A DNA stretch of 64,000 bases, taken from positions 186,001-250,000 of the IMG/VR virus record IMGVR_UViG_3300027621_000003; one strand, given 5' to 3'. This document shows positions 2,726 to 27,172 of this stretch, piece by piece. The notes beneath the pieces were generated by a model. It was not told the origin of the DNA. It searched no databases and saw only the letters and a list, made by a program, of their open reading frames with translations. Positions within the stretch are counted from its first letter, which is position 1. Each line of letters begins with the position of its first letter. The translations under genes were made by a program, and so were the position numbers.

Positions 2726-2858
2726 TATTATGATTCAGTTGTATACTGAACTTGGGCGTGGGGGCTTTCAGTGGTCACGGGAGAGTAGACTCCAACCTGC
2801 CTTATATTTTTTTTATAAGGTATTAGGAAATGTCAAAGGTATGTTGTACCTTTGTATT

Positions 2859-3236: not shown

Positions 3237-3582
3237 TCTCATAGGCTATTGATGATAGAGTTGTTCTTGTAATGTTGAAATCCCCCTCGTTAAGATGGAA
3301 GTGTTTGTGAAGTAATTCATGTAATGGTCTTAAGTCACAGTCCACCATCATCCATACATTCTGACTGAGGGGTTTATTTACAAATCCTTTCTTACCCTTC
3401 TCGAACCATACTATTGCCTCAGGTAATACATTCCCCCTATTTGGAACAAACCTAAGTATAATCCCCTTGGAACTTTCATCTACTTGGGGGGTATAATACT
3501 TCTGTACAATTAATCTTATGTTATGGTCCGTAACATTGGATGGTTCCATCTGTCTTTCGTATATCGGTTGGTCTTCACTCAT
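3208..3582 (-). CDS. Hypothetical protein
   Basis: Start corrected to MSEDQ at 3582; TATTTAT at 3590-3596. Confidence 0.6.
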   Translation of the reverse strand: MSEDQPIYERQMEPSNVTDHNIRLIVQKYYTPQVDESSKGIILRFVPNRGNVLPEAIVWFEKGKKGFVNKPLSQNVWMMVDCDLRPLHELLHKHFHLNEGDFNITRTTLSSIAYETISEWAKQT

Positions 3583-4272
3583 ATTGTTCATAAATATATA
3601 CTTATCCACACTTTTGTCCATACCTGACACCCTGTCAGTTCATAAAAAAATATGGGTTTGTGGATAACTTTGGGGGTAAAAATTTGGAATTGTCAAAATG
3701 TCAGTCCCCTCTTTCGCATGGGGATAATGCCTTCACAAGGTTTTAGTTTCCCCCACTTTCTCCCACAGGTGTATATTACCATAGTGTTATTCCCCCTGAC
3801 GCTATTGTAAGGACCAATTTATCCCCTCTGTTGACCCCTACAGAACCACTTTTTTCTATAGTGTTAAACCCCAGAGAATAATAGTTGTTATGGTCTACGA
3901 GGGCGGGAGACCCTTTAGGGTCCTTTAATCCCCCTTCAACGAGGGATGAAGTCCTTTTTTAAGATGACAACTAATGGACAACTTAAGTGGGTAATCTATT
4001 CCTGTCCCCTTAGTTCTATGGATATTATATATGGTGGTAAAAAGTGGGACATTATGTTTTGTATCTCATTCATCAGGTGAAACCTGACATTTACGATACA
4101 ACTAATCAGTCCCCCACTATTATCTATTCTATATGACATTACATATAATTGGTCGTAGACCAATACTTTTATATGTCATTACATATACGAAGATAACATA
4201 TCACCATCTCATTGTATCCATCTCCTTTAGTGGGGGACAAACTATAAGTGGGGGGTTCTTATTGTGGGGGAA

Positions 4273-4725
4273 TTACTTTTCCGTAATGGCCGTTACGGTA
4301 ATCGGTGTTACCATAGGTTCTAAGAAATTACAGAGGTCAGTAAGATATTTCATACACTCAGGGTCTTTCATACTACAATCTATAAGTTCTATCCTCTTAG
4401 GGTCTTCTAAGTACCATAGAGCAAGTTTGATTGACTTAACCTTAGTATCATATACATCACCGAACTCATGGTCATCATTATACCATCCTGTTTGGGTTTT
4501 TTGTTTAGTAAACTCTATAGAGAAGTTTAGGTTTGAACCATCGGTATAATGTTCAGGAACGTAATGAATATATACACCATTATCTTCTAATGTCTTATAT
4601 GTGTTTAATGTTACATCACCTATTAATTCCATAATCTGTCTTGTAAGATGACCTGCAGTTTTATAACCATCTAAATTCCATTGTATAATAAGATGTTCTA
4701 TTGTTGAATGTAATTCTTTATCCAT
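4273..4725 (-). CDS. Hypothetical protein
   Basis: ORF track; first ATG (MDKELH) at 4725. Confidence 0.6.
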   Translation of the reverse strand: MDKELHSTIEHLIIQWNLDGYKTAGHLTRQIMELIGDVTLNTYKTLEDNGVYIHYVPEHYTDGSNLNFSIEFTKQKTQTGWYNDDHEFGDVYDTKVKSIKLALWYLEDPKRIELIDCSMKDPECMKYLTDLCNFLEPMVTPITVTAITEK

Positions 4726-4938
4726 AGTGTTAATAATAATATATTCCCCCTGTTTAATCAAATCATATACGCATTTATCCGTATATATACGAATGAATAT
4801 CCGATTGGTTTATAGTTGTTAGTTTACTATAAACAGAATGAAGTAAAATTATGAATGAATGTGTGGAACGGAGTGAAACACCATGAGTGAGTAAATTTAC
4901 TTTATGATGTATCAAATCTTAATGATGCCGGGAACTGA

Positions 4939-5562
4939 TTATTCCCCCACCCTTTTTTCTTCTTTTTTTGGAACAATTACCGCATATTGTCCATTCCATT
5001 CAGATGCTGGTGGAATGTTTGGATTACCAGGGAATGCGGTTAACAATGAATAAACATTTCCGTTTTTAATACCTTGTAATATTTCATCATCTTCTTTAAC
5101 ATCATCAGGAAGATATTCTGGATTTGATTTTCTTATAATTAATGTTAATGTATCGGTCTTAAAATTATCTGAAGATTTGCTAGTATAAATTAAAGGGACT
5201 TCAATATCATTACCTCGTTCTTTTTTTGTTGTGGTAGTTTCTTTTGCGTCTTCATAATTTATTGCTTCATCATATGGTTTAACCAAATCATAACCAATAT
5301 TAGGAACGTTAACTTCAAACGCTCCACCTTCACCCAATTCATTATTTTCCAATGCCATATTAATAAAATTATTAATATCTTCATCAGTTATTCCTTCTTT
5401 AAAGGTTGAACCTGTTCCAAATTGATTGTGAGTTTTTATATGGTTTTTTGTATAATCGGCAACTAAAACAACATTTCCATCGTTTGATTGAATTTTATCT
5501 GTGGCTTCAATGATTAATCCCATCATTGATTTAATTCTGTCTATGTTTTCTTGCAATTTCAT
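4939..5562 (-). CDS. Leader type C protein with a toxin-RNase-like domain
   Basis: MKLQENIDRIKSMMGL leader; HIKTHN..GSTF ... LLTAFPG pattern; TATTTAT at 5568-5574. Confidence 0.55.
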   Translation of the reverse strand: MKLQENIDRIKSMMGLIIEATDKIQSNDGNVVLVADYTKNHIKTHNQFGTGSTFKEGITDEDINNFINMALENNELGEGGAFEVNVPNIGYDLVKPYDEAINYEDAKETTTTKKERGNDIEVPLIYTSKSSDNFKTDTLTLIIRKSNPEYLPDDVKEDDEILQGIKNGNVYSLLTAFPGNPNIPPASEWNGQYAVIVPKKEEKRVGE

Positions 5563-5624
5563 AATTAATAAATATGACACCCTACCCCTTTTTATTATAT
5601 TTACTTTTACCTATATTTATAGTT

Positions 5625-5930
5625 ATGGAAGCATCCACCGAAATGATTAAAAGAGTATTAGAACACTTGGTTTCACCTAAGTGGAATGGTATTGTGGAAT
5701 ATGAGATTGAACCTTCTACACACGATGATACAGGTGTAGAATACTACATGATAGATGTTATATTTGATATTGCTGGATATTGGGCGAAATATCACGCAGG
5801 TGAATATGATTATTCAGACCAAATGGATGCAGAGATTGAAGCTGATGTTAGAAATGCGGTGAAGTATTTGGGTATTAACACAACATTTGTAACAATATAT
5901 GTTAGGGATGAAGATGGAAATAATAAATAG
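5625..5930 (+). CDS. Hypothetical acidic protein, paralog of 10096-10368
   Basis: Start corrected (TATTTAT at 5614-5620). Shares the LxxLVxPK...(K/R)YL(G/S)I pattern. Confidence 0.7.
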   Translation: MEASTEMIKRVLEHLVSPKWNGIVEYEIEPSTHDDTGVEYYMIDVIFDIAGYWAKYHAGEYDYSDQMDAEIEADVRNAVKYLGINTTFVTIYVRDEDGNNK

Positions 5931-5938
5931 AATTACTA

Positions 5939-6277
5939 TTATGGACAAACATATTGATGCATAAGACGTAATCTTTCACCATATTTGTCTTTAGCATATT
6001 TCTCCATCATCCTATACGCTTTACCCCACTCAGGTGAACTATCATCCACACTTTCAAAGTAATCCCAATATATTGTGTTTAATGTTTTAGAAATTGTTGC
6101 CTCAATAAATTCATCCTCATCAATTTTACATATAGAATATTGGACATTGACTTCATCTGCAGATAGAAAGATTAAATCATCAACATTACTTATTCTTCTT
6201 TGTACGGCAGCCAAAAGATTGGACTCATTTAATCCCATCATCTCTTGTATTCTATTTACCTGTTCCTGTAAGTTCAT
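5939..6277 (-). CDS. Hypothetical protein, leader type C (MNLQEQVNRIQEMMGL)
   Basis: ORF track. Confidence 0.75.
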   Translation of the reverse strand: MNLQEQVNRIQEMMGLNESNLLAAVQRRISNVDDLIFLSADEVNVQYSICKIDEDEFIEATISKTLNTIYWDYFESVDDSSPEWGKAYRMMEKYAKDKYGERLRLMHQYVCP

Positions 6278-6753
6278 TTCTTCTTCTTTACACAGTTAGG
6301 ATATCTTTTACCAAACATTGTCTTCATACCTTTTTGAGTATAACCTGCCCAACATCTTTCAGTTAATTCCCCCTCTTTCATCTCTTGGGTTTTCTTTTTA
6401 GATTGTTCTTTCTTAGACTCAATATATTCAAACGCAGTCTTTAATCTTTTTTTAACTTCAGGGTCTTTTGCTCTTTCTAAGGCAACTCTTAATCTTTGAT
6501 GAATCAGATTAATAATCTGAGATTGTCTGGCATGTGATTTTGACTTGAAACTTTCTTTGTTTAATGTGTCAACAATATCTTGTTTTGTTCTAAACTTTAC
6601 AGATACAGTATCACTTGGATTTTCATCCGTATATAATCTTCTGTCAGAACCTTCAGGTTTTTTACCTGTTCCTGATTTTGGGTCATTTTCACTAATAACA
6701 CGTTTTACTAATGATATTAATTCTGATTCTGTTAATCTAACTATTTTTTTCAT
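6274..6753 (-). CDS. Modular hypothetical protein: leader A + DPKxGTGKKP..RRLYTDENP module + CWxGY..G.K...PNCV module
   Basis: Motifs recognised from T4-like phage proteins. Confidence 0.75.
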   Translation of the reverse strand: MKKIVRLTESELISLVKRVISENDPKSGTGKKPEGSDRRLYTDENPSDTVSVKFRTKQDIVDTLNKESFKSKSHARQSQIINLIHQRLRVALERAKDPEVKKRLKTAFEYIESKKEQSKKKTQEMKEGELTERCWAGYTQKGMKTMFGKRYPNCVKKKK

Positions 6754-6754
6754 A

Positions 6755-7534
6755 TTACTTTCTGTTGTAAGGTCTAAATCTCAATGGATTTGCTTTTATT
6801 GCTGACTTAGGAAATCTTAATCCTACTCCTTGTCGTCTTGCGTTTTTTAATGTTCTTGCGTATTCATCAAGTTCATCATTGTTTTCTTCTGCTTGAATAC
6901 CTTTAGTCTTATCTAAATTATCCTTTGGTATTTGTTTAATAATTGAAAAGTTATATCCCCAATAGTTTCCTTCATCACCAATACTTGATATTCTTAATGG
7001 ACGGCTATTCATTGTATCGGCAAATGTTGTCTCAGGATAATCATTTATTTTATCCAATTTATTTTTTATTTCATCCCAATCAACATCAACATAATCACCA
7101 TACTTTGTTAACATTTCATCAAACGAATCAAAACCATCTGCGAATCCTCTCCATCCACTATTGTAATAAGGTTTGTCATGTTTAACAAAGATATATTTAA
7201 TTCCTAATGGGTTTTTATCTTCATCCACATCCCTTCGTCTCTTCTCAAAGTATTGTCTTAGTTCTTCACCATAGTTGTCGTTTAGATACTCTTTTATTTC
7301 ATCCCAAGCCTTATGATAATCATCACCATACTCCTCAAATTCTCTTGGCATGATATCATACATGGCTTTGTGAATTGTTCTGAGTGTGGCCATATCTAAT
7401 TCTGTTGGTTCCTCTTTCTGAAACGCACCTATTCTATGTTTTTTAATTATACTGTCAATATTGCTGAAATCTATTCTGCGTTTTATTGACGGTGTAAGTT
7501 CTTCTTTTAATATTTTTCTAATTAAATCTTTCAT
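6755..7534 (-). CDS. Hypothetical protein, leader type B (MKDLIRKILKEE)
   Basis: ORF track. Confidence 0.75.
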   Translation of the reverse strand: MKDLIRKILKEELTPSIKRRIDFSNIDSIIKKHRIGAFQKEEPTELDMATLRTIHKAMYDIMPREFEEYGDDYHKAWDEIKEYLNDNYGEELRQYFEKRRRDVDEDKNPLGIKYIFVKHDKPYYNSGWRGFADGFDSFDEMLTKYGDYVDVDWDEIKNKLDKINDYPETTFADTMNSRPLRISSIGDEGNYWGYNFSIIKQIPKDNLDKTKGIQAEENNDELDEYARTLKNARRQGVGLRFPKSAIKANPLRFRPYNRK

Positions 7535-7536
7535 AA

Positions 7537-8070
7537 TTAATAAAAAGTTTTTACACCCATGTATTTTGATAAATCATATTTATCTATTATCTGTTTGAAG
7601 ATTTGTTGTCTATATCTTACACCTAATGTATTTTTTTTAGTAAGGAATGTATAACCAAATCCAGAATCTCCACTTGTTCCCAAAACTTTGTAATATGTTT
7701 GGTCATGAAGTCTTTGTGGTCTCAATCTGGCATTAAAATTAAATTCGTGACCGTTTTTTGAACCAAATATGAATTTCCCCAATTCTTTTTCATCCGAATG
7801 CCAAGATTTACTTTCGTCTATTCCAAGTTCATCAACTAACGCCTTATGTAAATATAAATTCATTCTATCCAAAGACATATAAGCAAGTGGTGTAGTTGTA
7901 TCTTCACTAAACTTAATAATGTCACCGTCATAAAGAATTTTAATTAAATTTTCAACTCCACCCATAACTCTGGCAGCAGTTTCTAATCCTGATTTTTTTA
8001 TCAGGGATTTAATGGCATCTTTTTTAGATTCAGTTTGTTCTCTTAATATTTTTCTAATTAAATCTTTCAT
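7537..8070 (-). CDS. Hypothetical protein, leader type B (MKDLIRKILREQ)
   Basis: Start corrected to 8070. Confidence 0.75.
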   Translation of the reverse strand: MKDLIRKILREQTESKKDAIKSLIKKSGLETAARVMGGVENLIKILYDGDIIKFSEDTTTPLAYMSLDRMNLYLHKALVDELGIDESKSWHSDEKELGKFIFGSKNGHEFNFNARLRPQRLHDQTYYKVLGTSGDSGFGYTFLTKKNTLGVRYRQQIFKQIIDKYDLSKYMGVKTFY

Positions 8071-8071
8071 A

Positions 8072-8437
8072 TTAGCAAAGGTGGTCATCTTTAATGTCCT
8101 GTATTAAATTACCGCCAGTAAATTTATCGGAATACTTATCGTTAAAATATTTAATTATTGCCTTATTAATTTCTTTTTTAGACACACCAAAAGACCTTCC
8201 ATATTGTGTTAATCTTTTCCAATTATCACAATCTGTTGAAACCCAAAGATTCCCAAATATATTCTTATGAAAAGATAAAAATTTACTATCAGGTTGGTAA
8301 AATCTGACATAACCATTACCATCATTTATAACAACAAAGTCTTTTAATACTCTATCAAAGAAATGACTTAAGACATTATAGTAATTGTCCTCGGTCATTA
8401 AATTGGAAAGTTGACTCTCCGTGATAATAATTTTCAT
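8072..8437 (-). CDS. Hypothetical protein, leader type A (MKIIITESQL)
   Basis: TATTTAT at 8442-8448. Confidence 0.75.
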   Translation of the reverse strand: MKIIITESQLSNLMTEDNYYNVLSHFFDRVLKDFVVINDGNGYVRFYQPDSKFLSFHKNIFGNLWVSTDCDNWKRLTQYGRSFGVSKKEINKAIIKYFNDKYSDKFTGGNLIQDIKDDHLC

Positions 8438-8451
8438 ATCTATAAATATAA

Positions 8452-8733
8452 CTACATAGATTTAAGGATTACTTCCAACATCTGAATTTTATCCTTATCT
8501 TCTTTTGTCTTCCTTGGTTTACTCTTGAGGTAACCAATCGCGTCCATTATTTCTTTTTGCTTAGCGTTAACCACAGGTGCAGTTTCTTTTGTAGTCACAG
8601 GTTTTCTTACACTCTTAGTCTTAGTTACGGTTGTCTTTGGTTTCTCATTATATAGGACATCCATCAACATTTTGGCTTTCCTTTCATCTTTGGTGATTGC
8701 TAGTATCAACAGGTATGTAAGTATCTTATCCAT
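8452..8733 (-). CDS. Hypothetical protein, paralog of 27882-28202
   Basis: Start corrected (TATCTTTG at 8738-8745). Shared C-terminal SKxxKTxxDKD motif. Confidence 0.65.
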   Translation of the reverse strand: MDKILTYLLILAITKDERKAKMLMDVLYNEKPKTTVTKTKSVRKPVTTKETAPVVNAKQKEIMDAIGYLKSKPRKTKEDKDKIQMLEVILKSM

Positions 8734-8802
8734 ACAACAAAGATACGAAAAAACCCCCACGTTGCCATGAGGGTTCAATATTATATTCATCAAGACTTTT
8801 TC

Positions 8803-9348
8803 TTATTTTGCTTGTTCAATGTTATAACTCTCAAGCATTTTGGCATATTCATCGGTATCTCTCCTCCTTATACTTTCTCTCTTTGCTAATTCTTGAATTT
8901 TTATAAGTCCATCTATGATTTGTTCTGGACGTGGAGGACAACCCGGTACATACACATCAACGGGAATTATGTTATCAATACCTTGAAGAACGCTATATGT
9001 ATCAAATATTCCACCAGAACAAGCACAAGCACCAACCGACAATACCCATTTAGGTTCAGCCATTTGGTCATATACCTGTTTGAGCACAGGACCCATCTTT
9101 TTTGATATAGTACCCATGACCATCAATAAATCTGTTTGTCGTGGAGTAAAAGACAAACGTTCAGAGCCAAATCTAGCCAAATCATAATTGGCTCCCATTG
9201 TCGCCATAAACTCAATTCCGCAACAGGATGTGGCAAAAGGCAAAGGCCAAAGAGAATTTGCTCGAGCCAATCCAATAACTTTATCAAATGAAGTGGCAAA
9301 GAAACCTTGTCCTTCTACTCCTTCGGGTGAATCAACGATTTTTACCAT
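8803..9348 (-). CDS. nuoB: NADH-quinone oxidoreductase subunit B
   Basis: [29 protein letters not shown] and [14 protein letters not shown] signature motifs. Confidence 0.95.
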
Positions 9349-9391
9349 ACTTTATTATTTTTTATATAGTTACAAAGATACGAAAAACTCC

Positions 9392-9955
9392 TTATACTAA
9401 ATGAACAAACATCTCACTTATAGGTAATTTTTTGTGAAGTGTGTTCCATAAAGCTGTATAGTCTTTTTCATGTAATTGTTTTTTTAATCCAATATATAGT
9501 GAGAATTCAGGATAAGAATCACTTCTTGGATATATTGTTATCTCATCAAGTTCTGGTAATGTTTTACCCGTTTCAATTTGATATTCCATTTCAACATCTT
9601 CCCACTTATCATAAATTATTTTCTCCATCATTTTGATGAACTCTTGTTTATCATCAATTATGAATTTACTTAAAACTTCAAAATCATCTATACCAATATA
9701 CTTTATATTATTAGATATTACATCTTCAGCATTACTCATAAAATTATAGTAATCTTCGTTAAAGTCAGAAGTAACATTGTTGTACCTATATGGGTCAACG
9801 TGAATGTTTGCAATATATTTACGCCAAGTTGGATATTCTCCACTTTTATGTTGACTATCTGAAACAGGTTCAACACTTATTTTTACACCTTTTTTTTCAA
9901 ATAGTAACTTTGATAATAATTTTTCAATTTGGGTTGCAACTTGACTACGGTCCAT
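9392..9955 (-). CDS. Hypothetical protein
   Basis: ORF track. Confidence 0.7.
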   Translation of the reverse strand: MDRSQVATQIEKLLSKLLFEKKGVKISVEPVSDSQHKSGEYPTWRKYIANIHVDPYRYNNVTSDFNEDYYNFMSNAEDVISNNIKYIGIDDFEVLSKFIIDDKQEFIKMMEKIIYDKWEDVEMEYQIETGKTLPELDEITIYPRSDSYPEFSLYIGLKKQLHEKDYTALWNTLHKKLPISEMFVHLV

Positions 9956-10095
9956 TACTATTAAATATCATTACTTACCCCATTTTGTTTTGAATATCAT
10001 ATAATAAAGTACAAGTGGTAATGCTAATACCAACCATAACAGACAATTTAATCTTTCTTTATTTGACATTATCTTAATATACAATATTTATCAGT

Positions 10096-10368
10096 ATGTA
10101 TCAATCAAATGAAATGATATCAGTTAAAAAACTGTTAGATAAATTAATCAAACCAAAACATCCAAACATAATTAGATTTGATGTTCGTGCTTATGATACT
10201 GACAGAGTGGGTTCAATCCCACATGTTTATGTTTATTTAAAAGACCATGATGATGAAGATGAACTTAACATAGATTGGGAAATTAAAGATGTTTTAAGAT
10301 ATTTATCAATCAAAAATCACATGATAAGATTCACACTTGGTGATGATGATGATTCAGCCTCCCTGTAA
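10096..10368 (+). CDS. Hypothetical protein, paralog of 5625-5930
   Basis: TATTTAT at 10085-10091. Confidence 0.7.
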   Translation: MYQSNEMISVKKLLDKLIKPKHPNIIRFDVRAYDTDRVGSIPHVYVYLKDHDDEDELNIDWEIKDVLRYLSIKNHMIRFTLGDDDDSASL

Positions 10369-10478
10369 TCAGGGTGTTTTAGGACCGTTACCGTTTCGGT
10401 AACAAAAAAAAGAGGAATTCGCTACTCCTCTTTTTTATTTTGATACGGTATGATACGCAAATATACGAGAGTGATACT

Positions 10479-10913
10479 TTAGATGTAAATATTATATTTG
10501 GATTCTATTGTGTAGTAATAATGATTTTGTTGCAGGTATTGAAGTGTTGGATGTGGGTCAAAGTGCGGTAAAAATGTTCCATTTTCATTTTTAAAGATGC
10601 AACAATGTGGTTTTCCTCGTTGGGATGCACCTCTCATAATTACATATTCTTCTTTTGTCTCATCATCTAATGAATGTTTTTTAATACATTTTTGATGTTT
10701 TAAGTCTAACCATAAATTCATAACTTTAAACCACGCATGGTCCTCAGTTGTTTTGTCTTTTTCATCTAACCCATAAAATGTGTAGACATTAGGAACTTCA
10801 TCAATTGGTTCATCCAACAATGAAGCAACACAGGCAATTAAACAATTACCATATGTAAGCCTTTTACCATCTGAATAAAACAGAGAGTATTTTGTTTGGT
10901 TTGTAAGTTTCAT
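10479..10913 (-). CDS. Hypothetical protein, possible papain-like Cys/His/Asp fold
   Basis: GNCLIACVASLL...HCC...FDPHP pattern. Confidence 0.5.
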   Translation of the reverse strand: MKLTNQTKYSLFYSDGKRLTYGNCLIACVASLLDEPIDEVPNVYTFYGLDEKDKTTEDHAWFKVMNLWLDLKHQKCIKKHSLDDETKEEYVIMRGASQRGKPHCCIFKNENGTFLPHFDPHPTLQYLQQNHYYYTIESKYNIYI

Positions 10914-11833
10914 TATTTATTTTTTTTCATAAATTTGTAATCAAAGTCAACATCTAAGTTGAATGATTTTACAAATGGTCGTATTTTTTTAAATACTGAG
11001 GGATTAAAATCATCTTCCCAAATATAATCAGGTAAATCAAAATATCCAACATCTTCCCATGTATCATCCTCTTCATTACCTACCATTAATCTATTGATTA
11101 ATAAATAAATTGTACCTTCATATTGAATTGGTTCATCATCTTCTTGGACATCCGTTTTCCAAAAATGAGTACTTTCTTCATCAAAACTATATTCCATATA
11201 AACATCCACTCGTTCATTATCATCATATGGTGTTGAAAACCAAGTTTCAAACGTTGAGTTATCAGGAATGTATTTTTTTAATAATGAATTAAACATTTGA
11301 GTTGCTTTACCGTCAATATTATCTCTATGTGATTCTTGAATAAATTCTTTTGAGAATTTCTCTTTACTGTAATCAGTAAAATATCTAATCATTTTATAGT
11401 AATCAGATAATAAATCTAATTTATCAAATTCATTTTCTACTTGAGATTGAGATAAAATACTATTATTATCACCATACATCATAATTCCTGAAGGTGCTGC
11501 GTATTTACCACCCAAGTAATTATCATCTGGTTTATTAATGAATAACCCATATTTGGTATTACCTAATCTTTGAGCAATCTCAGGGTTTTTAATTACAAGA
11601 TATGCCAATGAACCCATTTCATTATGTTTATTAAACATGGTGTCATCACATCTAGTTGTTGTACACCATTTAGCGTTGGCTCCATATTTTTTACTTGCTT
11701 CAAATGTCAGTGGAACAACCAATTCAAAATTATTATTTTTGAATAGTTTAATGTACTCATCAGAACTTACTTTAAATTTTTCAGTAATCTGATGAGTCTC
11801 TTCTTTTAATACTTGAAGAATTAGTTGTTTCAT
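10913..11833 (-). CDS. Leader type B protein with a YGxxxKWC domain
   Basis: Start corrected (TATTTAT at 11839-11845); VVPLTFEASKKYGANAKWCTT. Confidence 0.7.
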   Translation of the reverse strand: MKQLILQVLKEETHQITEKFKVSSDEYIKLFKNNNFELVVPLTFEASKKYGANAKWCTTTRCDDTMFNKHNEMGSLAYLVIKNPEIAQRLGNTKYGLFINKPDDNYLGGKYAAPSGIMMYGDNNSILSQSQVENEFDKLDLLSDYYKMIRYFTDYSKEKFSKEFIQESHRDNIDGKATQMFNSLLKKYIPDNSTFETWFSTPYDDNERVDVYMEYSFDEESTHFWKTDVQEDDEPIQYEGTIYLLINRLMVGNEEDDTWEDVGYFDLPDYIWEDDFNPSVFKKIRPFVKSFNLDVDFDYKFMKKNK

Positions 11834-12407: not shown

Positions 12408-12722
12408 ATGAATTTATTAGAAGAGTCATTACGAATTAAAAAAATGATGGTTATTGAACAATCATCATCAGACAATTATTTTAAAGAATTCTCTGAAGGT
12501 AATTTTAATAATTTAAAAGAGTTTTTATCAAATAATTCAGAATTTGTAAATAAATTAAAAATAATATTACATCAAGATTCAATTGATTCTATTGAATCAT
12601 CTTTAGTTAAATCAAATAAAACAAATTTAATGAGAGGTATGTCTGACGCTAAAAAATCAAAAGACATGGACTTATATAAGTTTTTAGAAATCTTTCTAAA
12701 AAATGCCGATGTTTTATATTAA
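12408..12722 (+). CDS. Hypothetical protein, leader type C (MNLLEESLRIKKMM)
   Basis: ORF track. Confidence 0.65.
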   Translation: MNLLEESLRIKKMMVIEQSSSDNYFKEFSEGNFNNLKEFLSNNSEFVNKLKIILHQDSIDSIESSLVKSNKTNLMRGMSDAKKSKDMDLYKFLEIFLKNADVLY

Positions 12723-13270
12723 AAGCCTAACTCTGTCTCAATATCAGCCAACTTTGGAAGGACTCTGTCTTTGTCTGACATTATTAATTGGCTAACATCT
12801 ACACCCCAATCTATATTAATTTCAGGGTCATTATATATAATACCACCGTCTGCTGATGTCATATATAACTCATCACATTTATAATGGAATACAGCAACAT
12901 CTGAAAGTGTAACAAACCCATGAGCAAATCCTTTTGGAACCAACATCATTTTCATATTGTCTTCAGATAATTTAACACCAAACCATTGTTTGTAGGTGTC
13001 TGATGATTTTCTAAGGTCAACCACAACATCATATACTTCACCTACAATACATCTAACAAGTTTTGCTTGTGGTGCTATCTTTTGAAAGTGAAGTCCTCTT
13101 AAAACTCCTTTAACACTAATTGATTGGTTATCTTGTACAAAGTTTGTATAGATACCTTGTTCCCTGAAAAAACGTTGGTTATAAGTTTCAAAAAAATACC
13201 CTCTGTTATCTTCGTGAACTGTAGGACTAATAACATACAAATCTTTAATTGGTGTTTGTTCTATTTTCAT
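12719..13270 (-). CDS. rfbC: dTDP-4-dehydrorhamnose 3,5-epimerase
   Basis: DNRGYFFE, FVQDNQSIS, GVLRGLHFQ and PKGFAHGF motifs. Confidence 0.95.
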   Translation of the reverse strand: MKIEQTPIKDLYVISPTVHEDNRGYFFETYNQRFFREQGIYTNFVQDNQSISVKGVLRGLHFQKIAPQAKLVRCIVGEVYDVVVDLRKSSDTYKQWFGVKLSEDNMKMMLVPKGFAHGFVTLSDVAVFHYKCDELYMTSADGGIIYNDPEINIDWGVDVSQLIMSDKDRVLPKLADIETELGF

Positions 13271-15669
13271 ATTTTACTTAGTGTTTTTAATGTTTTTAAC
13301 AAAGAATCTGGTGTAACAGAAATACTATCAATACCTTCACTAACTAAAAATTCTGCAAAATCAGGAAAATCAGATGGTCCTTGTCCACAAATTCCTACCT
13401 TAGTGTTAGTTTTTTTTCCAACCTTAATAAGGTGTGATATTGCTCGTTTTACCGCAAGATTTCTCTCATCGTAAATTGAGGATACAAGTGCTGAATCTCG
13501 GTCCAATCCTAAAATCAATTGTGTTAAATCATTGGAACCAATTGAGAATCCATCAATATGTTCTGAAAATTCTTCAGCCATAAAAATATTTGATGGTAAT
13601 TCTGCCATCAAATAAACCTCAAGACCTTTTTCACCTCTTTTTAATCCATAAGATTCCATGACTTTATAAACTTTTAATAACTCGTCTATTGTTCTACAAA
13701 AAGGAATCATAACTACAACATTACTAAATCCCATTTTTTCTCTAACTCTTTTGATTGCTTTAATTTCCATACCAAAAGCATCTTTATATTTTTCAGAATA
13801 ATATCTTGAGGCACCCCTCCAACCAATCATTGGATTTTCTTCATCTGGTTCAAAATAAATCCCACCCAATAAATTTTTATATTCATTAGATTTAAAATCG
13901 GAAAGTCTAACAATAACTTTATTGGGATAAAATGCCGCAGCAATTCTTGCAATACCATAACTTAATTTTTTTACAAAGAATGTTTCTTCATCTTCATAAC
14001 CTTTGGTTATTGTATTTATTTGCTCACTTAATTTTTTATCACCAATCTGTTTGTGTTGTAATAATGCCATTGGGTGAACTTTAATGTAATTATTAATTAT
14101 AAATTCTTCTCGTGCTAAACCAACTCCGGCATTTGGTAAACTTGAAAATTTAAATGCTATTTCAGGAGATGCAACATTTAACATTATGGGTGTTGATATT
14201 TTTGGTAATTCTTCCAAATTCGTTTCAATTTTTTCATAATCAATAAAACCATCATAAACAAATCCAACATCTCCTTCTCCACAAGAGACCGTAACTTTTT
14301 GGTGATTTTTTAATATGTCGGTTGCGTTCATTGTTCCAACAATTGCTGGTAATCCCATTTCTCGTGCAACAATTGCTGCGTGACAGGTTCTACCACCTTT
14401 ATTTGTAATGATTGCGGATGCTTTTTTCATTATGGGTTCCCAATCAGGGTCAGTCATATCGGTAACTAAAACACTACCTTCAACAAAGTCAGAGACATCA
14501 AACGTACCGTCACGACCATCTAATGAATACATTATTGTAACTTCTCCATTTGCAATTTTATCTCCGACTGCTCCACCTTTAACAATTGGCGTTAAATTTT
14601 CGGTATTGATTTTATATTCAACAAGTGTATCAGTTTTTTTTCTTGAATGTATTGTTTCGGGTCTGGCTTGAACAATATATAATTCATTGGTTAAACCATC
14701 AATTGCCCATTCCACATCCATAGGACACCAATATCCTTTTAAATCGGAATAATATTTTTCAATTGATGTAACCCATTTTGAGATTTCTAATACTTGATTA
14801 TCATTGATACAAAAATTGTTTTTATGTTCCTCATCAATATTAATAATTTTGGTTAATTTACCTTGACCCTCACCATAAACCATTTTTTTATCTTTGTTAC
14901 CCAATTTTTTTTCAATAATACAAGAAAATCCTTCTTCCAATAATGGTTTGAATACAATAAATTCGTCAGGAGATACTGAACCTTGAACAACCATCTCACC
15001 CAACCCATAACTTCCATTTATAATTACAACATCTTTGAATCCACTTTCAGTATCTAATGAAAATGCAACACCAGAAGATGATAAATCAGAACGAACCATT
15101 TTTTGAACACAAACAGACAATCCAACATCAAAATGGTCATATCCAAAAGATGTTCTATAAGATATTGCTCTATCGGTAAACAGGGAAGCAAAACAATTTC
15201 TTACAGATTCTAAAATGGATTCTGTACCTCTAACGTTTAAAAAAGTTTCTTGTTGACCAGCAAAACTGGCATCAGGTAAATCTTCGGCGGTTGCAGATGA
15301 CCTTACAGCAACGTCAGTCATTGTTTGACCATATGTTTCCGATAACTCAAGATACTTTAATTGTATTTCATTTTTTAGTTTTTCAGGAAAAACTCCATTT
15401 CTGATTAATTCCCTAATTGCAAGACCAGTCTTACGAAGTGCGATTATGTCATTTGGGTTTAAATCTAAGATTAGTTTTCTGATAGATTTATCTAATTTAT
15501 TATGATTAATAAAATCATAATATCCTTTTACGGTTATAGCAAAACCATTTGGAACTTTAATTTTTAAAGTATTAAGATGTTGCAACATTTCACCCAAAGA
15601 TGCATTTTTTCCACCGACTACATGAATGTCTTTTAAAGACACATTGTTTAAATCAAGAATATATTTCAT
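13267..15669 (-). CDS. ppsA: Phosphoenolpyruvate synthase (pyruvate, water dikinase)
   Basis: VGGKNASLGEM, VAVRSSATAEDLPDASFAGQQ, GGRTCHAAIVARE and DGFSIGSNDLTQ motifs. Confidence 0.97.
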   Translation of the reverse strand: MKYILDLNNVSLKDIHVVGGKNASLGEMLQHLNTLKIKVPNGFAITVKGYYDFINHNKLDKSIRKLILDLNPNDIIALRKTGLAIRELIRNGVFPEKLKNEIQLKYLELSETYGQTMTDVAVRSSATAEDLPDASFAGQQETFLNVRGTESILESVRNCFASLFTDRAISYRTSFGYDHFDVGLSVCVQKMVRSDLSSSGVAFSLDTESGFKDVVIINGSYGLGEMVVQGSVSPDEFIVFKPLLEEGFSCIIEKKLGNKDKKMVYGEGQGKLTKIINIDEEHKNNFCINDNQVLEISKWVTSIEKYYSDLKGYWCPMDVEWAIDGLTNELYIVQARPETIHSRKKTDTLVEYKINTENLTPIVKGGAVGDKIANGEVTIMYSLDGRDGTFDVSDFVEGSVLVTDMTDPDWEPIMKKASAIITNKGGRTCHAAIVAREMGLPAIVGTMNATDILKNHQKVTVSCGEGDVGFVYDGFIDYEKIETNLEELPKISTPIMLNVASPEIAFKFSSLPNAGVGLAREEFIINNYIKVHPMALLQHKQIGDKKLSEQINTITKGYEDEETFFVKKLSYGIARIAAAFYPNKVIVRLSDFKSNEYKNLLGGIYFEPDEENPMIGWRGASRYYSEKYKDAFGMEIKAIKRVREKMGFSNVVVMIPFCRTIDELLKVYKVMESYGLKRGEKGLEVYLMAELPSNIFMAEEFSEHIDGFSIGSNDLTQLILGLDRDSALVSSIYDERNLAVKRAISHLIKVGKKTNTKVGICGQGPSDFPDFAEFLVSEGIDSISVTPDSLLKTLKTLSKI

Positions 15670-15691
15670 ACGTATTATTTTTTTTATTGTT

Positions 15692-22572: not shown

Positions 22573-25500
22573 TTACCTTAGTAATGTAAAAGTTCCGTTG
22601 TATTGAAATACTTTATCTTCAAGTGACGTTACTATCATTTTATATACATATACACCATCTGGTGCAGGTTGTCCTTTATAATTACCATCCCATCCTTTTG
22701 TAAGGTCGGTTGTTTCATACATTTTTTCACCCCAACGATTAAAGATTAACATTTCATATGTTTTGTTATTAATAACATACGGTCTGAATGTATTGTTTTC
22801 ATTTGGTCCAGCACCATCAGGTGTAAATGCGTCAGGTACAAAGATAATGATATCAGGACCAATAACAACCTTTTTCATTGAAGAATCTTTACATCCTTTA
22901 TCTGTGGTAACAATTAACTTAATCCAATATGTCCCTGTATCCTTTCCAAATACAATGTTTGAGTTCTTAAGTGTATCACTACCAATCTTATATGATTTAC
23001 CCCAAGTCCAATTGTGTTTCATGTTGGTGACAAATGGATTCTGACTAACACTTGATGTGTTAATAGTTTTGAACTTAGGTAATGCCACCGTTGTTTTGTA
23101 CAATGGGTCGGTATTAAACACAACACTTGGTTTTGGATAAACATTAACGGTTTGTGTTATTGTTCTATTACATTGTTTTTTACCTTCTACGTTTGTAATT
23201 GATAAAGTTATTTGGTATTGTCCTTGTGTTGAGAACAAGTAAGGAACTGAACTGTTATTAGTGGAGATACTATTAGTATTTACATACCAATTATATGTTA
23301 ACAAAGAAGGGTTAATTCCTTTTCTTTCGGTGGGTGTAAAAGTGGTATTCAGTGGTTCACATCCATTTTGATATGTAAACATTGGGTCGGGATATTGGTG
23401 AATATAAACTCTTACGGTATCAAAAGGGTTTGGACATACATTTTTTGCAACACTCCAATCAACTCTAACATCAACATAACCTAACGCAGTATCAGTAATT
23501 GTTGGGACATACTTTTTATTCATGGTTGGTCCAAATGTTGCCATTGGTGTCCAATTAAATGTTCCACCATTTAAGTATTGGGTATCAATTTTTAATGTAA
23601 CTGTGTCAAACTCACATACTTCAATTGGTTTAACAAATTTAACTTTTGGTATATTAACAATTGTGATTTTAGCGTATTCAGTATCTTGACAGTTATATGG
23701 TGTAAGACCAATCATCATCCATTTGTATGGACCTGGTACATAACCTGTTAGAGTTGTTGTTCCGTTGAAGAATCTACCATCAGGATAACTCACAATGGTT
23801 CCACCTTTATTACTTACAGCTAATGTTAACACATCCAAAGGAATTGCGGATGCACATATTGTAGTATCTCTAACTCTCAAGTCCGATGTATCATGAACTA
23901 TGATATTAAAACTATCTATTTTTACACAACCAAATTGTGAACTTACATATTTTATGTTATACACACCAGGTCCTGTAGATGTTTTGAATAATCCTGTAGA
24001 AATGTTTGTAGTTACTTTTGGATGACTCCTATCACCATTTACATCTTGAACGTAAATTGTTCCTCCTGTTGGTTTAACACCATTAACGGTTATGTAGTCA
24101 AACATATTAACATTAATACCTGAGTTCACACAATAATCAGGAATTGTTTTAATAATAACTGTTGGTTCTGCAATTATATTTACGTCAACAGTATCGGTAC
24201 TTTGACATCCTGTAACTAAATCTCTAACAATAAGTTTGAATGTGTATTTTCCTTGATATTCATCTTGAAACGATAAACCAAAGTTAAATTTGATGTTTGG
24301 TGTTACACCACCTGAAATGTCATACAATAATTTTGATGTATCAATTCCTGATGGAGCTCTTACCACATCCCATCTCATATAAACACCTGATTTGGTTGCT
24401 GGTTTAGTTCTTAACACGTCCATCATCATTGACCCAATATCCTGACAAATAGTTTTTGGAACTAATGTAATCATTGGTGTACCATAAATTGTTTGTGTTG
24501 TTGAATCCATGTTGGAACAACTATTTGTGTCTGTGAACTTCACATACATTTTGGTGGTATAATTGTTTCCACCTTGTAATTTACTATTGTCAAGTAAAGT
24601 TGTGTTGAACAAAAATCTTCCATTATAAGGAATATATCCGTAAGTTATATTACCTGATTTTTTTAACTTATCTCCATTCCAAACATCATACGTTCCAAGA
24701 TTATGAGGTTTAACTAAGAATAGTTCCGACCATATACTACCATAAGAATAACATTGAGGTTTTAGTGGTTTTGGACTCCAACTAATTTTTGGTAATGGTT
24801 TAACCCTCACAAACATTGTATCCATATCTTCACAAGAACGTCCATTTTGAGTTAGAACAGTCTTTAATGTAAACATATAGGTTAATTTTGTTATATCAGA
24901 TTTTAGCTTATAGGTTGATAAATTACCCAATCCGCCCCAAGTATATGTAGGACTTAATAGTGGTGGTCTATGACTGGCAGTCAAGGTGAATGTGTCTTTA
25001 TCGCATATTGCTTGGTTTAGTCCTGCATTTGTTATTACAGTATCGTTTACAAAAACTGTTGCGGTATCATATTTTACACACTTCCACTTTGTTTCCATTA
25101 CCTGTACCCAATAGATGCCTTTTAAATTGGTTTTAAATATTCGTGTTGTATCACCAGTGCTCCACATATATTTAACCGTGTCTGAATTTTGAGCATCAAA
25201 TGTAGCAATTTCATAAGTACATATTTGTTGGTCAATTCCAATTCCCACCACTGGTAATGGTTTCTTATAAATTGTAGTTGTATCATAGAAAATACATCCA
25301 TCCCCATCAGTAATTTTTAGACGAACTGTAGAGTCACGATTAATATTAGGAATACTTAAAGTTTGAAAAGTATCTCCTAAAATATGCTCTTCAGATTTCC
25401 AAGCCGCTTTAGACCCTGTATCTTTCACTACTCTGGTCCAATAGTATTTGAATGGTGAATTACCAAACAATATGTTAGCATTTAACTTCATTGTAGTACC

Positions 25501-27114
25501 AAAACACGCAAAAGTGTCAGCATCAGCCATAACAACCTGAGGTGGATTTGGAATAATAACAGTATCCCTATATATGGTAGGACAGTTATCTGAGTTGTTT
25601 ACAGTATGTACAATAATGTATTTTCCACCACGGTAAAATGTCATAGTATCTGATTTTTTTGTACTATAAAATATCTCAGACTTGCCCAAGCTATCTCTTA
25701 CACTCCACTTAAATTGAGGAGCACCTTTAAAGGATAAACTAACAGATGCCGCCATGGCGAATTTACCACATTTTAAATTTGTGTATTTGCGAATACTAAA
25801 TGCTCGTGGATTTACTTTAACCTTAAAACCACGAATGGCTTGAGAAGGTTTTGGACAGTGTTCATCTGTTACTGTTACCGTGAAAGCATAAGAAATATCT
25901 GACGCCATACCCACAGAAGGTGTCCATTCAAAATAAGCCCATGCTTTTCTTTTTTCGGGCCAATCCTTCCTATTTGCCAAGGTAAACTTAGCGCCAGGAA
26001 TACCTTTATTCCATTTTAAATTTGTTGTATCTGGAATTGTTTGATTCGGAGTAAATGTTTCATCATCCGATTCTACCTTGAATTTTAGTGTTTCACCTTC
26101 ACAGACTTTCCAATTAAACGGACCTAACAATGTTGGTGCTTTGTTGTAACCACAATCATCTTTCACCCACAATTGCATATCTCTACGTGTTTTACCAACA
26201 ATGATATAACTGCCTGTGGCACTGTCTTTTCGCCATTCTGTAATTACAATCACCGCAATTGCAACTTCATCACATTTCGTGGGTGTTAAGATAATATCAC
26301 CAGAACTTGTATCAAAGAATAATCCTCTTGGAGGGTTCAGTCCGGGTTTAGGAGCACAGTTAATTGAAGTTGGTGGAATGCAATATGGCGTCATGAAATA
26401 ACGAGGAGTAAATGGCGAAGAATAAGATACAGAATTGTTGGGCAAAGTGTTAATACCATTTGTTAAACTGTATGAAAAAGAATCATAATCAACAGTATCA
26501 ATTGCACCATTATTAAAATAATATGCCTGATTACAACAAAGAAAGGCGATGGGAGCATTACTTAGTGTTGGAGAAGAGTTACACTTGTTTGTAGTCTTCT
26601 TTATATTACAGATGTTAATCATACAGGTAGTATAAAAACCTTGACTGGCGGGTCCAGTAGTAATGGCACCATTTCTACAACACTGTCCAATGTAAAATGT
26701 CACTTCACAACATGTAGATTTATTGAGATAACCACTTAATGGACTTGTATTAAAATCTACCGTAACTTCATAGGTATGTTCTTCAATTCCCTCACCAGTA
26801 CCATAAGTATTTTGAGGAGAACAAGGCGAACTCGCTGTTGAACATCGTGGCGTAACGTCTTTAATTCCCGTTCTGGTAATAGATAAAAGACTACTTCCGC
26901 ATCCATTTCCACCATTGGTTCCTGCAAATACACCAAATTCAGGAGAATTGAATGGGACACCTCTACAATCTCTATAAATTTTTGCTGTGATTTTATATTT
27001 TCCGTTACCCAAACATTTATAAGACATATCTCCACCCATCATGTGAGTGGATGTGGAAATGTTTGATAACAAAAACGTTAGAATAAAAAGTAATAATGGT
27101 AAAAGTTTTTTCAT
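22573..27114 (-). CDS. Large T9SS type B CTD surface protein with Ig/PKD-like repeats
   Basis: Signal peptide MKKLLPLLLF; THMMGGDMSYKCLG N-terminus; C-terminal FVPDAFTP...IFNRWGE...WDGNY...GVYVY...GTFTLLR. Confidence 0.9.
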   Translation of the reverse strand: MKKLLPLLLFILTFLLSNISTSTHMMGGDMSYKCLGNGKYKITAKIYRDCRGVPFNSPEFGVFAGTNGGNGCGSSLLSITRTGIKDVTPRCSTASSPCSPQNTYGTGEGIEEHTYEVTVDFNTSPLSGYLNKSTCCEVTFYIGQCCRNGAITTGPASQGFYTTCMINICNIKKTTNKCNSSPTLSNAPIAFLCCNQAYYFNNGAIDTVDYDSFSYSLTNGINTLPNNSVSYSSPFTPRYFMTPYCIPPTSINCAPKPGLNPPRGLFFDTSSGDIILTPTKCDEVAIAVIVITEWRKDSATGSYIIVGKTRRDMQLWVKDDCGYNKAPTLLGPFNWKVCEGETLKFKVESDDETFTPNQTIPDTTNLKWNKGIPGAKFTLANRKDWPEKRKAWAYFEWTPSVGMASDISYAFTVTVTDEHCPKPSQAIRGFKVKVNPRAFSIRKYTNLKCGKFAMAASVSLSFKGAPQFKWSVRDSLGKSEIFYSTKKSDTMTFYRGGKYIIVHTVNNSDNCPTIYRDTVIIPNPPQVVMADADTFACFGTTMKLNANILFGNSPFKYYWTRVVKDTGSKAAWKSEEHILGDTFQTLSIPNINRDSTVRLKITDGDGCIFYDTTTIYKKPLPVVGIGIDQQICTYEIATFDAQNSDTVKYMWSTGDTTRIFKTNLKGIYWVQVMETKWKCVKYDTATVFVNDTVITNAGLNQAICDKDTFTLTASHRPPLLSPTYTWGGLGNLSTYKLKSDITKLTYMFTLKTVLTQNGRSCEDMDTMFVRVKPLPKISWSPKPLKPQCYSYGSIWSELFLVKPHNLGTYDVWNGDKLKKSGNITYGYIPYNGRFLFNTTLLDNSKLQGGNNYTTKMYVKFTDTNSCSNMDSTTQTIYGTPMITLVPKTICQDIGSMMMDVLRTKPATKSGVYMRWDVVRAPSGIDTSKLLYDISGGVTPNIKFNFGLSFQDEYQGKYTFKLIVRDLVTGCQSTDTVDVNIIAEPTVIIKTIPDYCVNSGINVNMFDYITVNGVKPTGGTIYVQDVNGDRSHPKVTTNISTGLFKTSTGPGVYNIKYVSSQFGCVKIDSFNIIVHDTSDLRVRDTTICASAIPLDVLTLAVSNKGGTIVSYPDGRFFNGTTTLTGYVPGPYKWMMIGLTPYNCQDTEYAKITIVNIPKVKFVKPIEVCEFDTVTLKIDTQYLNGGTFNWTPMATFGPTMNKKYVPTITDTALGYVDVRVDWSVAKNVCPNPFDTVRVYIHQYPDPMFTYQNGCEPLNTTFTPTERKGINPSLLTYNWYVNTNSISTNNSSVPYLFSTQGQYQITLSITNVEGKKQCNRTITQTVNVYPKPSVVFNTDPLYKTTVALPKFKTINTSSVSQNPFVTNMKHNWTWGKSYKIGSDTLKNSNIVFGKDTGTYWIKLIVTTDKGCKDSSMKKVVIGPDIIIFVPDAFTPDGAGPNENNTFRPYVINNKTYEMLIFNRWGEKMYETTDLTKGWDGNYKGQPAPDGVYVYKMIVTSLEDKVFQYNGTFTLLR

Positions 27115-27172
27115 CTCTATAAGTATAGACAATATTAATGATAAAAAGTATTCTTGCTGTAAAAAAATAAAA

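What the first reader, a model, noticed from the sequence alone, without database searches (positions are those of the whole stretch)
8803..9380. Stand-alone complex I subunit NuoB with its own promoter and terminator
Seen: an intact nuoB with all cluster cysteine motifs, a TATCTTTG promoter and a downstream terminator, and no other nuo gene in the window. Known: NuoB carries cluster N2 at the quinone-binding site. Inference: the phage supplies or replaces this subunit to sustain or rewire respiration, analogous to psbA in cyanophages.
Basis: partly seen in the sequence, partly recalled or inferred. Interest (0 to 1): 0.6.

Follow-up and report, generated by a model that had tools for sequence, protein, structure and literature searches.

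The report
Jumbo phage carries lone complex-I NuoB gene
A 295-kb T4-like phage of freshwater Bacteroidota carries a single, intact and strongly conserved copy of NuoB, the complex I subunit that passes electrons to quinone. It has no other complex I gene but does carry iron-sulfur-cluster assembly genes, so it probably resupplies this one subunit to the host's respiratory chain during infection.

Summary
Window 8803-9348 (-) encodes a 181-aa NuoB: NCBIfam equivalog 356 bits against a cut-off of 263, with all four N2-cluster cysteines present. A TATCTTTG promoter box lies 24 nt upstream and an 11-bp hairpin plus T-run terminator lies 27 nt downstream.

The gene sits among phage ORFans in a 98%-complete T4-like jumbo phage. 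No other nuo gene was found in the 295 kb. It is not a chimera: a second IMG/VR record matches 100% over 12.5 kb, 14 freshwater runs hold both junctions, and GC3 matches phage genes rather than host genes.

A second, related phage lineage carries the same gene, fused in an overlapping iscU-nuoB cassette. The two phage copies form one clade, sister to a bacterial nuoABC operon copy.

Selection is strongly purifying. Synonymous sites are saturated, pN is 0.044, and all 103 highly conserved columns are kept.

This phage also encodes IscU, an A-type Fe-S carrier, SOD, thioredoxin and Clp proteins.

Best reading: a host-derived auxiliary gene that supplies NuoB to host complex I, loaded by phage Fe-S machinery. 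Function is inferred, not shown. I class it as a new member of a known kind; no paper in the library searched describes it.

The parts
8803..9348 (-). nuoB coding sequence (181 aa). Complex I subunit B carrying the [4Fe-4S] cluster N2 ligands C42, C43, C108 and C137.
   Evidence: NF011395 scores 356 bits. All 75 invariant and all 103 columns conserved at >=95% among 199 Bacteroidota NuoB are kept.
9373..9380 (-). TATCTTTG promoter box, matching the Bacteroidota -7 consensus TAnnTTTG. A 24-nt A-rich leader (9349-9372) follows.
   Evidence: 23 of 66 genomic copies lie 0-40 nt before a gene start, against a control mean of 0.7. Function as a promoter is inferred, not shown.
8751..8776 (-). Intrinsic-terminator-like hairpin (11 pairs, GCAA loop) followed by a T-run, 27 nt after the nuoB stop codon.
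   Evidence: centroid -16.7 kcal/mol, z -2.67; the only terminator-like site in 8300-10100.
8738..8745 (-). TATCTTTG box of the next gene. It directly follows the nuoB terminator and lies 4 nt before the ATG at 8733, so nuoB is bracketed as its own unit.
9392..9955 (-). Upstream neighbour, a 187-aa ORFan. It shows the phage context of nuoB.
   Evidence: No Pfam or PHROG hit. In IMG/VR it is found only in the second record of this same phage.
8452..8733 (-). Downstream neighbour, a 93-aa ORFan. It shows the phage context of nuoB.
22573..27132 (-). 1519-aa phage protein. Its 89-90% identical homologue directly precedes the iscU-nuoB cassette in the sister phage lineage, which ties that lineage to this phage family.
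   Evidence: (L099, L101, L103).

Best explanation
The gene is a host-derived auxiliary metabolic gene with moron architecture (its own promoter and terminator). It was captured once from an uncultured freshwater Bacteroidota lineage and has been kept by at least two related T4-like jumbo phage lineages.

Proposed mechanism. The gene is transcribed from a TAnnTTTG-type promoter during infection. The phage NuoB receives its [4Fe-4S] cluster N2 with help from the phage's own IscU scaffold and A-type carrier. It then takes the NuoB position in the host's NDH-1, between NuoD, NuoH, NuoI and NuoA. This keeps NADH:quinone electron transfer and proton-motive force running through the infection cycle, in which host gene expression may fall and oxidative damage to Fe-S proteins may rise.

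Shown here:
- the identity, integrity and phage context of the gene;
- a single origin for the two phage copies;
- strong purifying selection;
- the link to Fe-S assembly genes.

Inferred, not shown:
- transcription timing;
- cluster loading by phage IscU or the carrier;
- incorporation into host complex I;
- a fitness benefit to the phage.
For: Identity.

Phage genome: Gp23 capsid protein, T4 portal and prohead protease are present, and CheckV completeness is 98%.

Bacteroidota host: supported by T9SS sorting domains, SprB repeats, TAnnTTTG boxes and the NuoB tree.

Not a chimera.

Single origin: the two phage lineages form one clade (protein 100/86; DNA 100/93; codon positions 1+2 95/86), sister to a bacterial nuoABC copy at 93% aa identity.

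Selection:
- pS is 0.82 and pN 0.044 between the phage lineages.
- dN/dS against the nearest bacterium is 0.039, within the bacterium-to-bacterium range of 0.01-0.06.
- There are no departures at 103 conserved columns, which include non-ligand, interface-type positions.

Fe-S link:
- The same genome holds iscU (177 bits), a paaA-like gene and an A-type carrier (66.7 bits) in a row.
- In the sister lineage the iscU stop overlaps the nuoB start (TAATG or ATGGTAA).
- SOD, thioredoxin, ClpB, ClpP and DnaJ are also encoded.

Expression: one RNA-library contig covers 8791-9087 with 0 mismatches.
Against: No experiment or stranded read shows transcription. The RNA-library contig could come from carried-over DNA.

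Nothing here shows that NuoB is the labile or limiting subunit of bacterial complex I.

The phage branches are about 3 times longer than the sister bacterial branch in the protein tree (0.041 and 0.034 against 0.012). This could mean slight relaxation or a faster phage clock.

The gene is rare. 0 of 11 other IscU-bearing viral records carry it, two of them complete, so it is not generally needed.

In this phage, iscU sits 30 kb away and under a different upstream motif class, ATATTTAT. Co-regulation of the two genes is therefore not shown.
Confidence: 0.6

Rival explanations
1. The phage NuoB works off-complex as a soluble Fe-S protein. It could be a cluster acceptor, store or carrier, or an electron-transfer partner working with phage IscU, the A-type carrier or the PaaA-like di-iron protein, rather than a complex I subunit.
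For: Translational coupling to iscU in the sister lineage. The phage has an Fe-S module and a PaaA-like gene. No partner nuo subunit is phage-encoded.
Against: An off-complex role should relax selection on residues needed only for contacts with NuoD, NuoH, NuoI and NuoA. Yet 103 of 103 conserved columns are kept and dN/dS equals that of bacterial orthologues. The protein is 93% identical to an operon-encoded NuoB.
Confidence: 0.15
2. The phage NuoB is a modulator or poison subunit. It enters or titrates complex I assembly to lower or redirect NADH oxidation, for example to limit ROS or raise NADH for phage biosynthesis. This is the 'rewire' half of the first reader's idea.
For: There is only indirect support. 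One residue (R157) is unique among 199 homologues, and the phage branches are somewhat longer.
Against: All cluster ligands and all conserved positions are intact. The few substitutions fall at positions that also vary among bacteria. A dominant-negative protein would be expected to lose ligands or Q-site residues.
Confidence: 0.1
3. The gene is a neutral passenger: a recently transduced host gene with no role for the phage.
For: High identity to bacterial NuoB (up to 93% aa and 84.6% nt to L097) and rarity among related phages.
Against: The gene is present in two phage lineages that are saturated at synonymous sites but only 4.4% different at non-synonymous sites. Each copy has shifted to its own genome's GC3 (0.26 and 0.50, against 0.40 in the sister bacterium). 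It also carries a phage-type promoter box and a terminator.
Confidence: 0.05
4. The locus is an assembly chimera or host contamination in the viral contig.
For: None was found. The only ground is the general risk with metagenome-assembled viral genomes.
Against: A second IMG/VR record (3300027772_000006) is 100% identical over 12,543 bp across the gene. 14 freshwater DNA runs from 2017-2025 hold 99-100% of the words of 8300-10100, and one 5.6-kb contig spans 7000-11000 without a difference. Both neighbours are phage ORFans. GC3 is 0.258, against 0.231+-0.074 for phage genes.
Confidence: 0.01

Closest known systems
Bacterial NuoB / Nqo6 / NDUFS7 (PSST), the N2-cluster subunit of respiratory complex I
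   Same: Full-length match to the NuoB equivalog model. It is 93% identical to a Bacteroidota operon copy, E = 1e-56 to 1e-54 against solved NuoB/Nqo6 chains, and has the same four Cys ligands.
   Different: It is encoded alone in a phage genome, with its own promoter box and terminator. It has no nuoA upstream, no nuoC downstream, and no other nuo gene in 295 kb.
Cyanophage psbA (D1) and similar single-subunit auxiliary metabolic genes
   Same: One core, cofactor-bearing subunit of a large host energy-conversion complex. It is host-derived, kept under purifying selection, and expressed from phage signals.
   Different: For D1, rapid turnover gives a known rationale (established knowledge). 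No such lability is known for NuoB. The target is respiration, not photosynthesis, and the gene is rare even among related phages.
Viral Fe-S cluster assembly AMGs (IscU and A-type carriers) in T4-like environmental phages (Nishimura et al. 2017, PMC5332604)
   Same: This phage also carries IscU and an A-type carrier, along with ClpP and other Fe-S-related genes. IscU is common in IMG/VR, with at least 594 stretches.
   Different: The Fe-S client proteins reported there are radical SAM enzymes, Cas4, Grx and PaaD. A complex I subunit as the client, and an overlapping iscU-nuoB cassette, are not described there.
Phage morons (a gene with its own promoter and terminator inserted between phage genes)
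   Same: A promoter box upstream and a hairpin terminator downstream, set between unrelated ORFans. Gene content in this region varies among relatives.
   Different: The empty insertion site could not be shown, because the neighbour genes have no relatives in IMG/VR outside this same phage.

Membership tests
NuoB (NADH-quinone oxidoreductase subunit B; PF01058 / NF011395) | Score above the curated family cut-offs over the full length | tested here: met
   PF01058 100.9 bits (cut-off 27). NF011395 356 bits (cut-off 263), residues 2-178 of 181.
NuoB (NADH-quinone oxidoreductase subunit B; PF01058 / NF011395) | Four cysteine ligands of cluster N2, including the tandem CC pair | tested here: met
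   C42, C43, C108 and C137 align with Nqo6 C45, C46, C111 and C140.
NuoB (NADH-quinone oxidoreductase subunit B; PF01058 / NF011395) | Positions conserved across orthologues are retained (proxy for subunit interfaces and the quinone site) | tested here: met
   75 of 75 invariant columns and 103 of 103 columns conserved at >=95% among 199 Bacteroidota NuoB are kept.
NuoB (NADH-quinone oxidoreductase subunit B; PF01058 / NF011395) | Encoded within a nuo operon next to nuoA and nuoC (usual context; not a defining property of the protein) | tested here: not met
   The gene is stand-alone. There is no other nuo gene in the genome. Bacterial relatives lie in nuoA-B-C-D operons.
NuoB (NADH-quinone oxidoreductase subunit B; PF01058 / NF011395) | Binds a [4Fe-4S] cluster and assembles into complex I | not testable with these tools
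   This needs EPR, co-purification or complementation.
Phage auxiliary metabolic gene (AMG) | Lies inside a bona fide phage genome with viral genes on both sides | tested here: met
   T4-like hallmark genes are present and the record is 98% complete. The neighbours are ORFans or PHROG-only. A second identical assembly exists.
Phage auxiliary metabolic gene (AMG) | Host-derived metabolic gene nested within the host clade | tested here: met
   The phage clade is sister to a bacterial operon copy inside uncultured freshwater Bacteroidota.
Phage auxiliary metabolic gene (AMG) | Maintained by purifying selection in phage lineages | tested here: met
   pN 0.044 against pS 0.82 between the phage lineages. 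dN/dS is 0.039 against the nearest bacterium.
Phage auxiliary metabolic gene (AMG) | Expressed during infection | tested here: inconclusive
   One 297-nt, 0-mismatch contig over 8791-9087 in a metatranscriptome run. It has no strand information and DNA carry-over is not excluded.
Moron (autonomous promoter-gene-terminator unit) | Own promoter and terminator flanking the gene | tested here: met
   Met at motif level only. The TATCTTTG box is enriched before gene starts, and there is a hairpin plus T-run.
Moron (autonomous promoter-gene-terminator unit) | Absent from the same site in close relatives (insertion shown) | tested here: inconclusive
   Neighbour genes have no relatives outside this phage. 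The close relative L102 diverges in this region, but only part of its contig is held.

The most novel reading that the evidence does not exclude
A virus maintains host respiration by replacing a single core subunit of the 11-14-subunit complex I. In the sister lineage it makes that subunit in a translationally coupled unit with the Fe-S scaffold IscU. That would imply NuoB and its N2 cluster are the damage-prone or assembly-limiting point of bacterial complex I in vivo, making this a respiratory counterpart of cyanophage psbA.
Probability: 0.45. Interest if true: 0.75.

Novelty: new member of a known kind. Interest (0 to 1): 0.6.

Why it matters
Phage auxiliary genes have repeatedly pointed to the rate-limiting or most fragile steps of host metabolism; psbA/D1 is the classic case. 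A complex I core subunit kept under strong selection in phages, physically linked to Fe-S assembly genes, would do two things. It would name NuoB/N2 as such a step in aerobic heterotrophs, and it would extend viral energy takeover from photosynthesis to respiration in abundant freshwater Bacteroidota.

The idea is directly testable by complementation, co-purification and EPR. The gene also gives a precise host link: the sister bacterial nuoB is 93% identical at protein level and 84.6% at DNA level.

I found no description of a phage nuoB in the searchable literature. No genuine example exists in INPHARED; the hits there are mislabelled bacterial operons. In IMG/VR it occurs only in this phage.

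Tried and rejected
- PHROG scan of NuoB: no family.
- INPHARED tblastn gave 8 hits, all at or below 58% identity. The two I checked (H4, H3) are bacterial nuoA-B-C-D operons labelled as phage or 'UNVERIFIED', so I rejected them as precedents.
- I first doubted that the P0002 lineage was a phage: its contigs were at most 2.6 kb, GC was 0.43, and the downstream ORFs carry signal peptides. Longer metagenome contigs settled it. They carry a 89-90% homologue of the window's 1519-aa protein and a 93% homologue of another phage gene around the iscU-nuoB cassette.
- Pairwise synonymous distances suggested independent acquisition by the two phage lineages (phage1-L097 pS 0.57 against phage1-phage2 0.82). 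DNA trees still recover one phage clade, so I kept single acquisition. Later phage-host recombination is not excluded; the gene's ends are 92-100% identical to L097.
- The sigma-70 promoter scan showed no enrichment, as expected for a Bacteroidota system.
- GTDB taxonomy of the nearest MAGs was not returned, so the host is named only as uncultured freshwater Bacteroidota.
- An empty insertion site could not be found.
- I did not run complex prediction, structure prediction or the large representative search.
- The Pfam genome survey lists are cut at 25 families per batch. The absence of nuo genes therefore rests, not on those lists.

Full report
**1. What is there**

The minus-strand ORF 8803..9348 encodes 181 aa. 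It matches Pfam Oxidored_q6 at 100.9 bits. It matches the NCBIfam NuoB equivalog NF011395 end to end at 356 bits, above the cut-off of 263. It has no PHROG family. Against solved structures it matches NuoB/Nqo6 chains at E = 1e-56 to 1e-54. Its Cys42, Cys43, Cys108 and Cys137 align with the four N2 ligands of Thermus Nqo6, Cys45/46/111/140.

A hairpin at 8776..8751 has 11 pairs and a GCAA loop, is followed by a T-run, and lies 27 nt after the stop codon. The TATCTTTG box of the next gene follows it directly.

The box is a real recurrent signal. The genome has 66 copies against about 23 expected. Of these, 23 lie 0-40 nt before a called start, whereas permuted 8-mers give a mean of 0.7 and a maximum of 3. 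Thirteen copies lie exactly 4 nt before an ATG. The box fits the Bacteroidota -7 consensus TAnnTTTG; that comparison rests on established knowledge and was not tested here.

**2. The genome around it**

The window is bases 186001-250000 of a 294,914-bp IMG/VR virus record that CheckV rates 98% complete. A Pfam survey of 338 called ORFs found the following (each list is cut at 25 families):
- T4-type hallmark genes: Gp23 capsid protein (4.6e-73), T4 portal (3.3e-72) and prohead protease.
- Bacteroidota markers: Por_Secre_tail and CHU_C sorting domains, and SprB repeats.
- A sigma-70-type factor.
- Many host-maintenance genes: Fe/Mn superoxide dismutase, thioredoxin, ClpB-like, ClpP and DnaJ, PPDK/PEP-utilising enzyme, PPK2 and PhoH.

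The eight genes around nuoB have no Pfam family, and only weak or function-unknown PHROG hits.

No other nuo gene was found in the genome. tblastn with the ORFs of six bacterial nuo loci hits only nuoB. Pfam searches for NuoD, NuoC, NuoH and NuoL/M/N find nothing, while the control genomes do match.

**3. Not a chimera**

- A second IMG/VR record from another metagenome (3300027772_000006, 232,874 bp) is 100% identical over the whole 12,543 bp fetched around the gene.
- Fourteen freshwater or lake DNA runs from 2017-2025 hold 99-100% of the sampled words of 8300-10100, which includes both junctions. A single 5.6-kb contig in one of them spans 7000-11000 without a difference. The tool warns that any one of these runs may be the source sample.
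- The gene's GC3 is 0.258. That lies inside the phage gene distribution (0.231 +- 0.074) and far from the nearest bacterial copies (0.40-0.45).

**4. Relatives and origin**

The closest proteins are 88-93% identical. P0001 (93%) lies between nuoA and nuoC on a bacterial contig. P0005, P0006, P0007 and P0054 lie in nuoA-B-C-D-E operons of uncultured freshwater Bacteroidota.

P0002 (93% aa, 78% nt; a cluster of 209 sequences) is different. It is never beside nuoA or nuoC. It sits directly after an iscU gene whose stop overlaps its start, as TAATG or ATGGTAA. Longer metagenome contigs show that this lineage is a related phage. The cassette follows a homologue (89-90% aa) of the window's 1519-aa protein (22573..27132) and precedes a 93% homologue of another gene of this phage.

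Trees from protein, from all codon positions, and from positions 1+2 each place the two phage lineages in one clade (support 100/86, 100/93 and 95/86). That clade is sister to the bacterial copy L097/P0001 (98/90; 99/97) inside a clade of uncultured freshwater Bacteroidota. The simplest history is one capture from that host lineage followed by divergence within the phage family. The gene's ends are 92-100% identical in DNA to L097, so later phage-host recombination is possible.

**5. Selection**

Between the two phage lineages, synonymous sites are saturated (pS 0.82) while pN is 0.044. Against L097, dN/dS is 0.039, within the bacterium-to-bacterium range of 0.01-0.06. Both phage proteins keep all 75 invariant columns and all 103 columns conserved at 95% or more among 199 Bacteroidota NuoB. 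Phage 1 has one residue not seen in any bacterium (R157), at a variable position. The phage end branches are about three times longer than the sister bacterial branch. This is the only hint of faster change.

**6. The Fe-S link**

Thirty kilobases from nuoB (genome 164007-165684, outside the window) the phage has three overlapping genes: iscU (NifU_N, 177 bits), a PaaA/PaaC-family gene (278 bits) and an A-type Fe-S carrier (Fe-S_biosyn, 66.7 bits).

Viral IscU is common. At least 594 IMG/VR stretches encode it, and the literature describes it in T4-like marine viruses together with Fe-S client genes (PMC5332604). NuoB is not common. IMG/VR holds Bacteroidota-type NuoB only in this phage. None of 11 other IscU-bearing viral records has PF01058, including two complete genomes of 238 and 209 kb.

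**7. Expression**

One metatranscriptome run holds a 297-nt contig covering 8791-9087 with no mismatch. Two others hold contigs over neighbouring genes. These are contigs without strand or depth information, and DNA carry-over is not excluded, so this is weak support only. The same two runs also hold a bacterial-type nuoB-nuoC contig that shares 61 nt with the 3' end of the phage gene. That places a candidate host in the same samples.

**8. How it most likely works**

The protein is indistinguishable from a working NuoB at every conserved position, including positions that matter only inside complex I. The phage encodes none of NuoB's partners. The most economical reading is therefore that phage NuoB enters the host's complex I.

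The phage-encoded IscU and carrier, the iscU-nuoB fusion in the sister lineage, and the SOD, thioredoxin and Clp genes all point one way: keeping Fe-S proteins made and loaded during infection. NuoB would be one such client, and the one that feeds quinone.

Why NuoB rather than another subunit is unknown. Lability of N2 or of NuoB is a hypothesis, not a finding. The rival readings are less well supported, for the reasons given under each: an off-complex Fe-S role, a modulating subunit, a neutral passenger, or a chimera.

**9. Novelty**

The protein is an ordinary NuoB and the category (phage auxiliary gene or moron) is known. The new points are the member itself (a complex I core subunit carried alone by phages) and its coupling to iscU.

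Searches of the paper library found no phage nuoB. One paper mentions nuoA (K00330) on a soil viral contig in an HGT analysis. The INPHARED hits I checked are bacterial operons.

Noticed in passing
Outside the window: genome G000 164007-165684 (L098 8007-9684, + strand): Three overlapping genes form a phage Fe-S module: iscU (NifU_N, 177 bits), a PaaA/PaaC-family di-iron protein (278 bits) and an A-type Fe-S carrier (66.7 bits). A metallophosphoesterase and a cREC_REC domain protein precede them. The role of the PaaA-like gene is unexplained.
   Followed up: partly
Whole genome; examples in the window at 260, 8745, 17736, 28488, 29738, 34675 and 36509 (- strand): Thirteen TATCTTTG boxes lie exactly 4 nt before an ATG, which suggests leaderless or near-leaderless mRNAs. 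A second upstream motif class, (G)ATATTTAT(A), precedes about 45 genes including iscU; 57% of all its genomic copies lie just before starts. These may be two promoter classes, and the phage has its own sigma-70-type factor.
   Followed up: partly
window 22573-27132 (-) and loci L099, L101-L104, L107-L110: The 1519-aa protein is conserved at 64-90% across many metagenome contigs. A variable cassette region follows it directly: small signal-peptide ORFs of 97, 137 and 186 aa, with or without iscU-nuoB. It looks like a hot spot for accessory genes.
   Followed up: partly
L102 (Ga0315274_10007179, 1-10744) compared with window about 12700-27100: A close relative shares three genes at 97.7-100% aa identity, including the 800-aa kinase-like gene (window 13267-15669). 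Next to them it carries different genes, and it has a 186-aa cassette ORF that this phage lacks. This indicates mosaic gene content within the species-level group.
   Followed up: no
window 6755-7534 (-) and 7537-8088 (-): Two adjacent ORFans share an N-terminal motif (MKDLIRKILKEE / MKDLIRKILREQ) and a 37-nt stretch at about 95% identity. They form a small tandem paralogue family of unknown function.
   Followed up: no
window 8802-8862; RNA runs X16 and X17: Metatranscriptome contigs of a bacterial-type nuoB-nuoC share 61 nt (2 mismatches) with the 3' end of the phage nuoB and then run on into a NuoC start (MNNEIL...). This is a candidate host in the same lakes, or a trace of phage-host recombination.
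   Followed up: partly
Genome-wide; coordinates not resolved: The phage has a large set of host-like maintenance and energy genes: Fe/Mn SOD, thioredoxin, ClpB-like, ClpP, DnaJ, PPDK/PEP-utilising enzyme, PPK2, a glutamine-synthetase catalytic domain, guanylate kinase, NUDIX, many glycosyltransferases, and proteins with T9SS sorting domains and SprB repeats.
   Followed up: no
INPHARED records CAKLQH020000007.1, CAKLQF020000011.1 and MT837458.1: Records filed as phage ('Acinetobacter phage MD-2021a', 'UNVERIFIED Bacteriophage sp.') carry ordinary bacterial nuoA-B-C/D... operons next to chromosomal genes. They look like bacterial DNA filed under phage names.
   Followed up: partly
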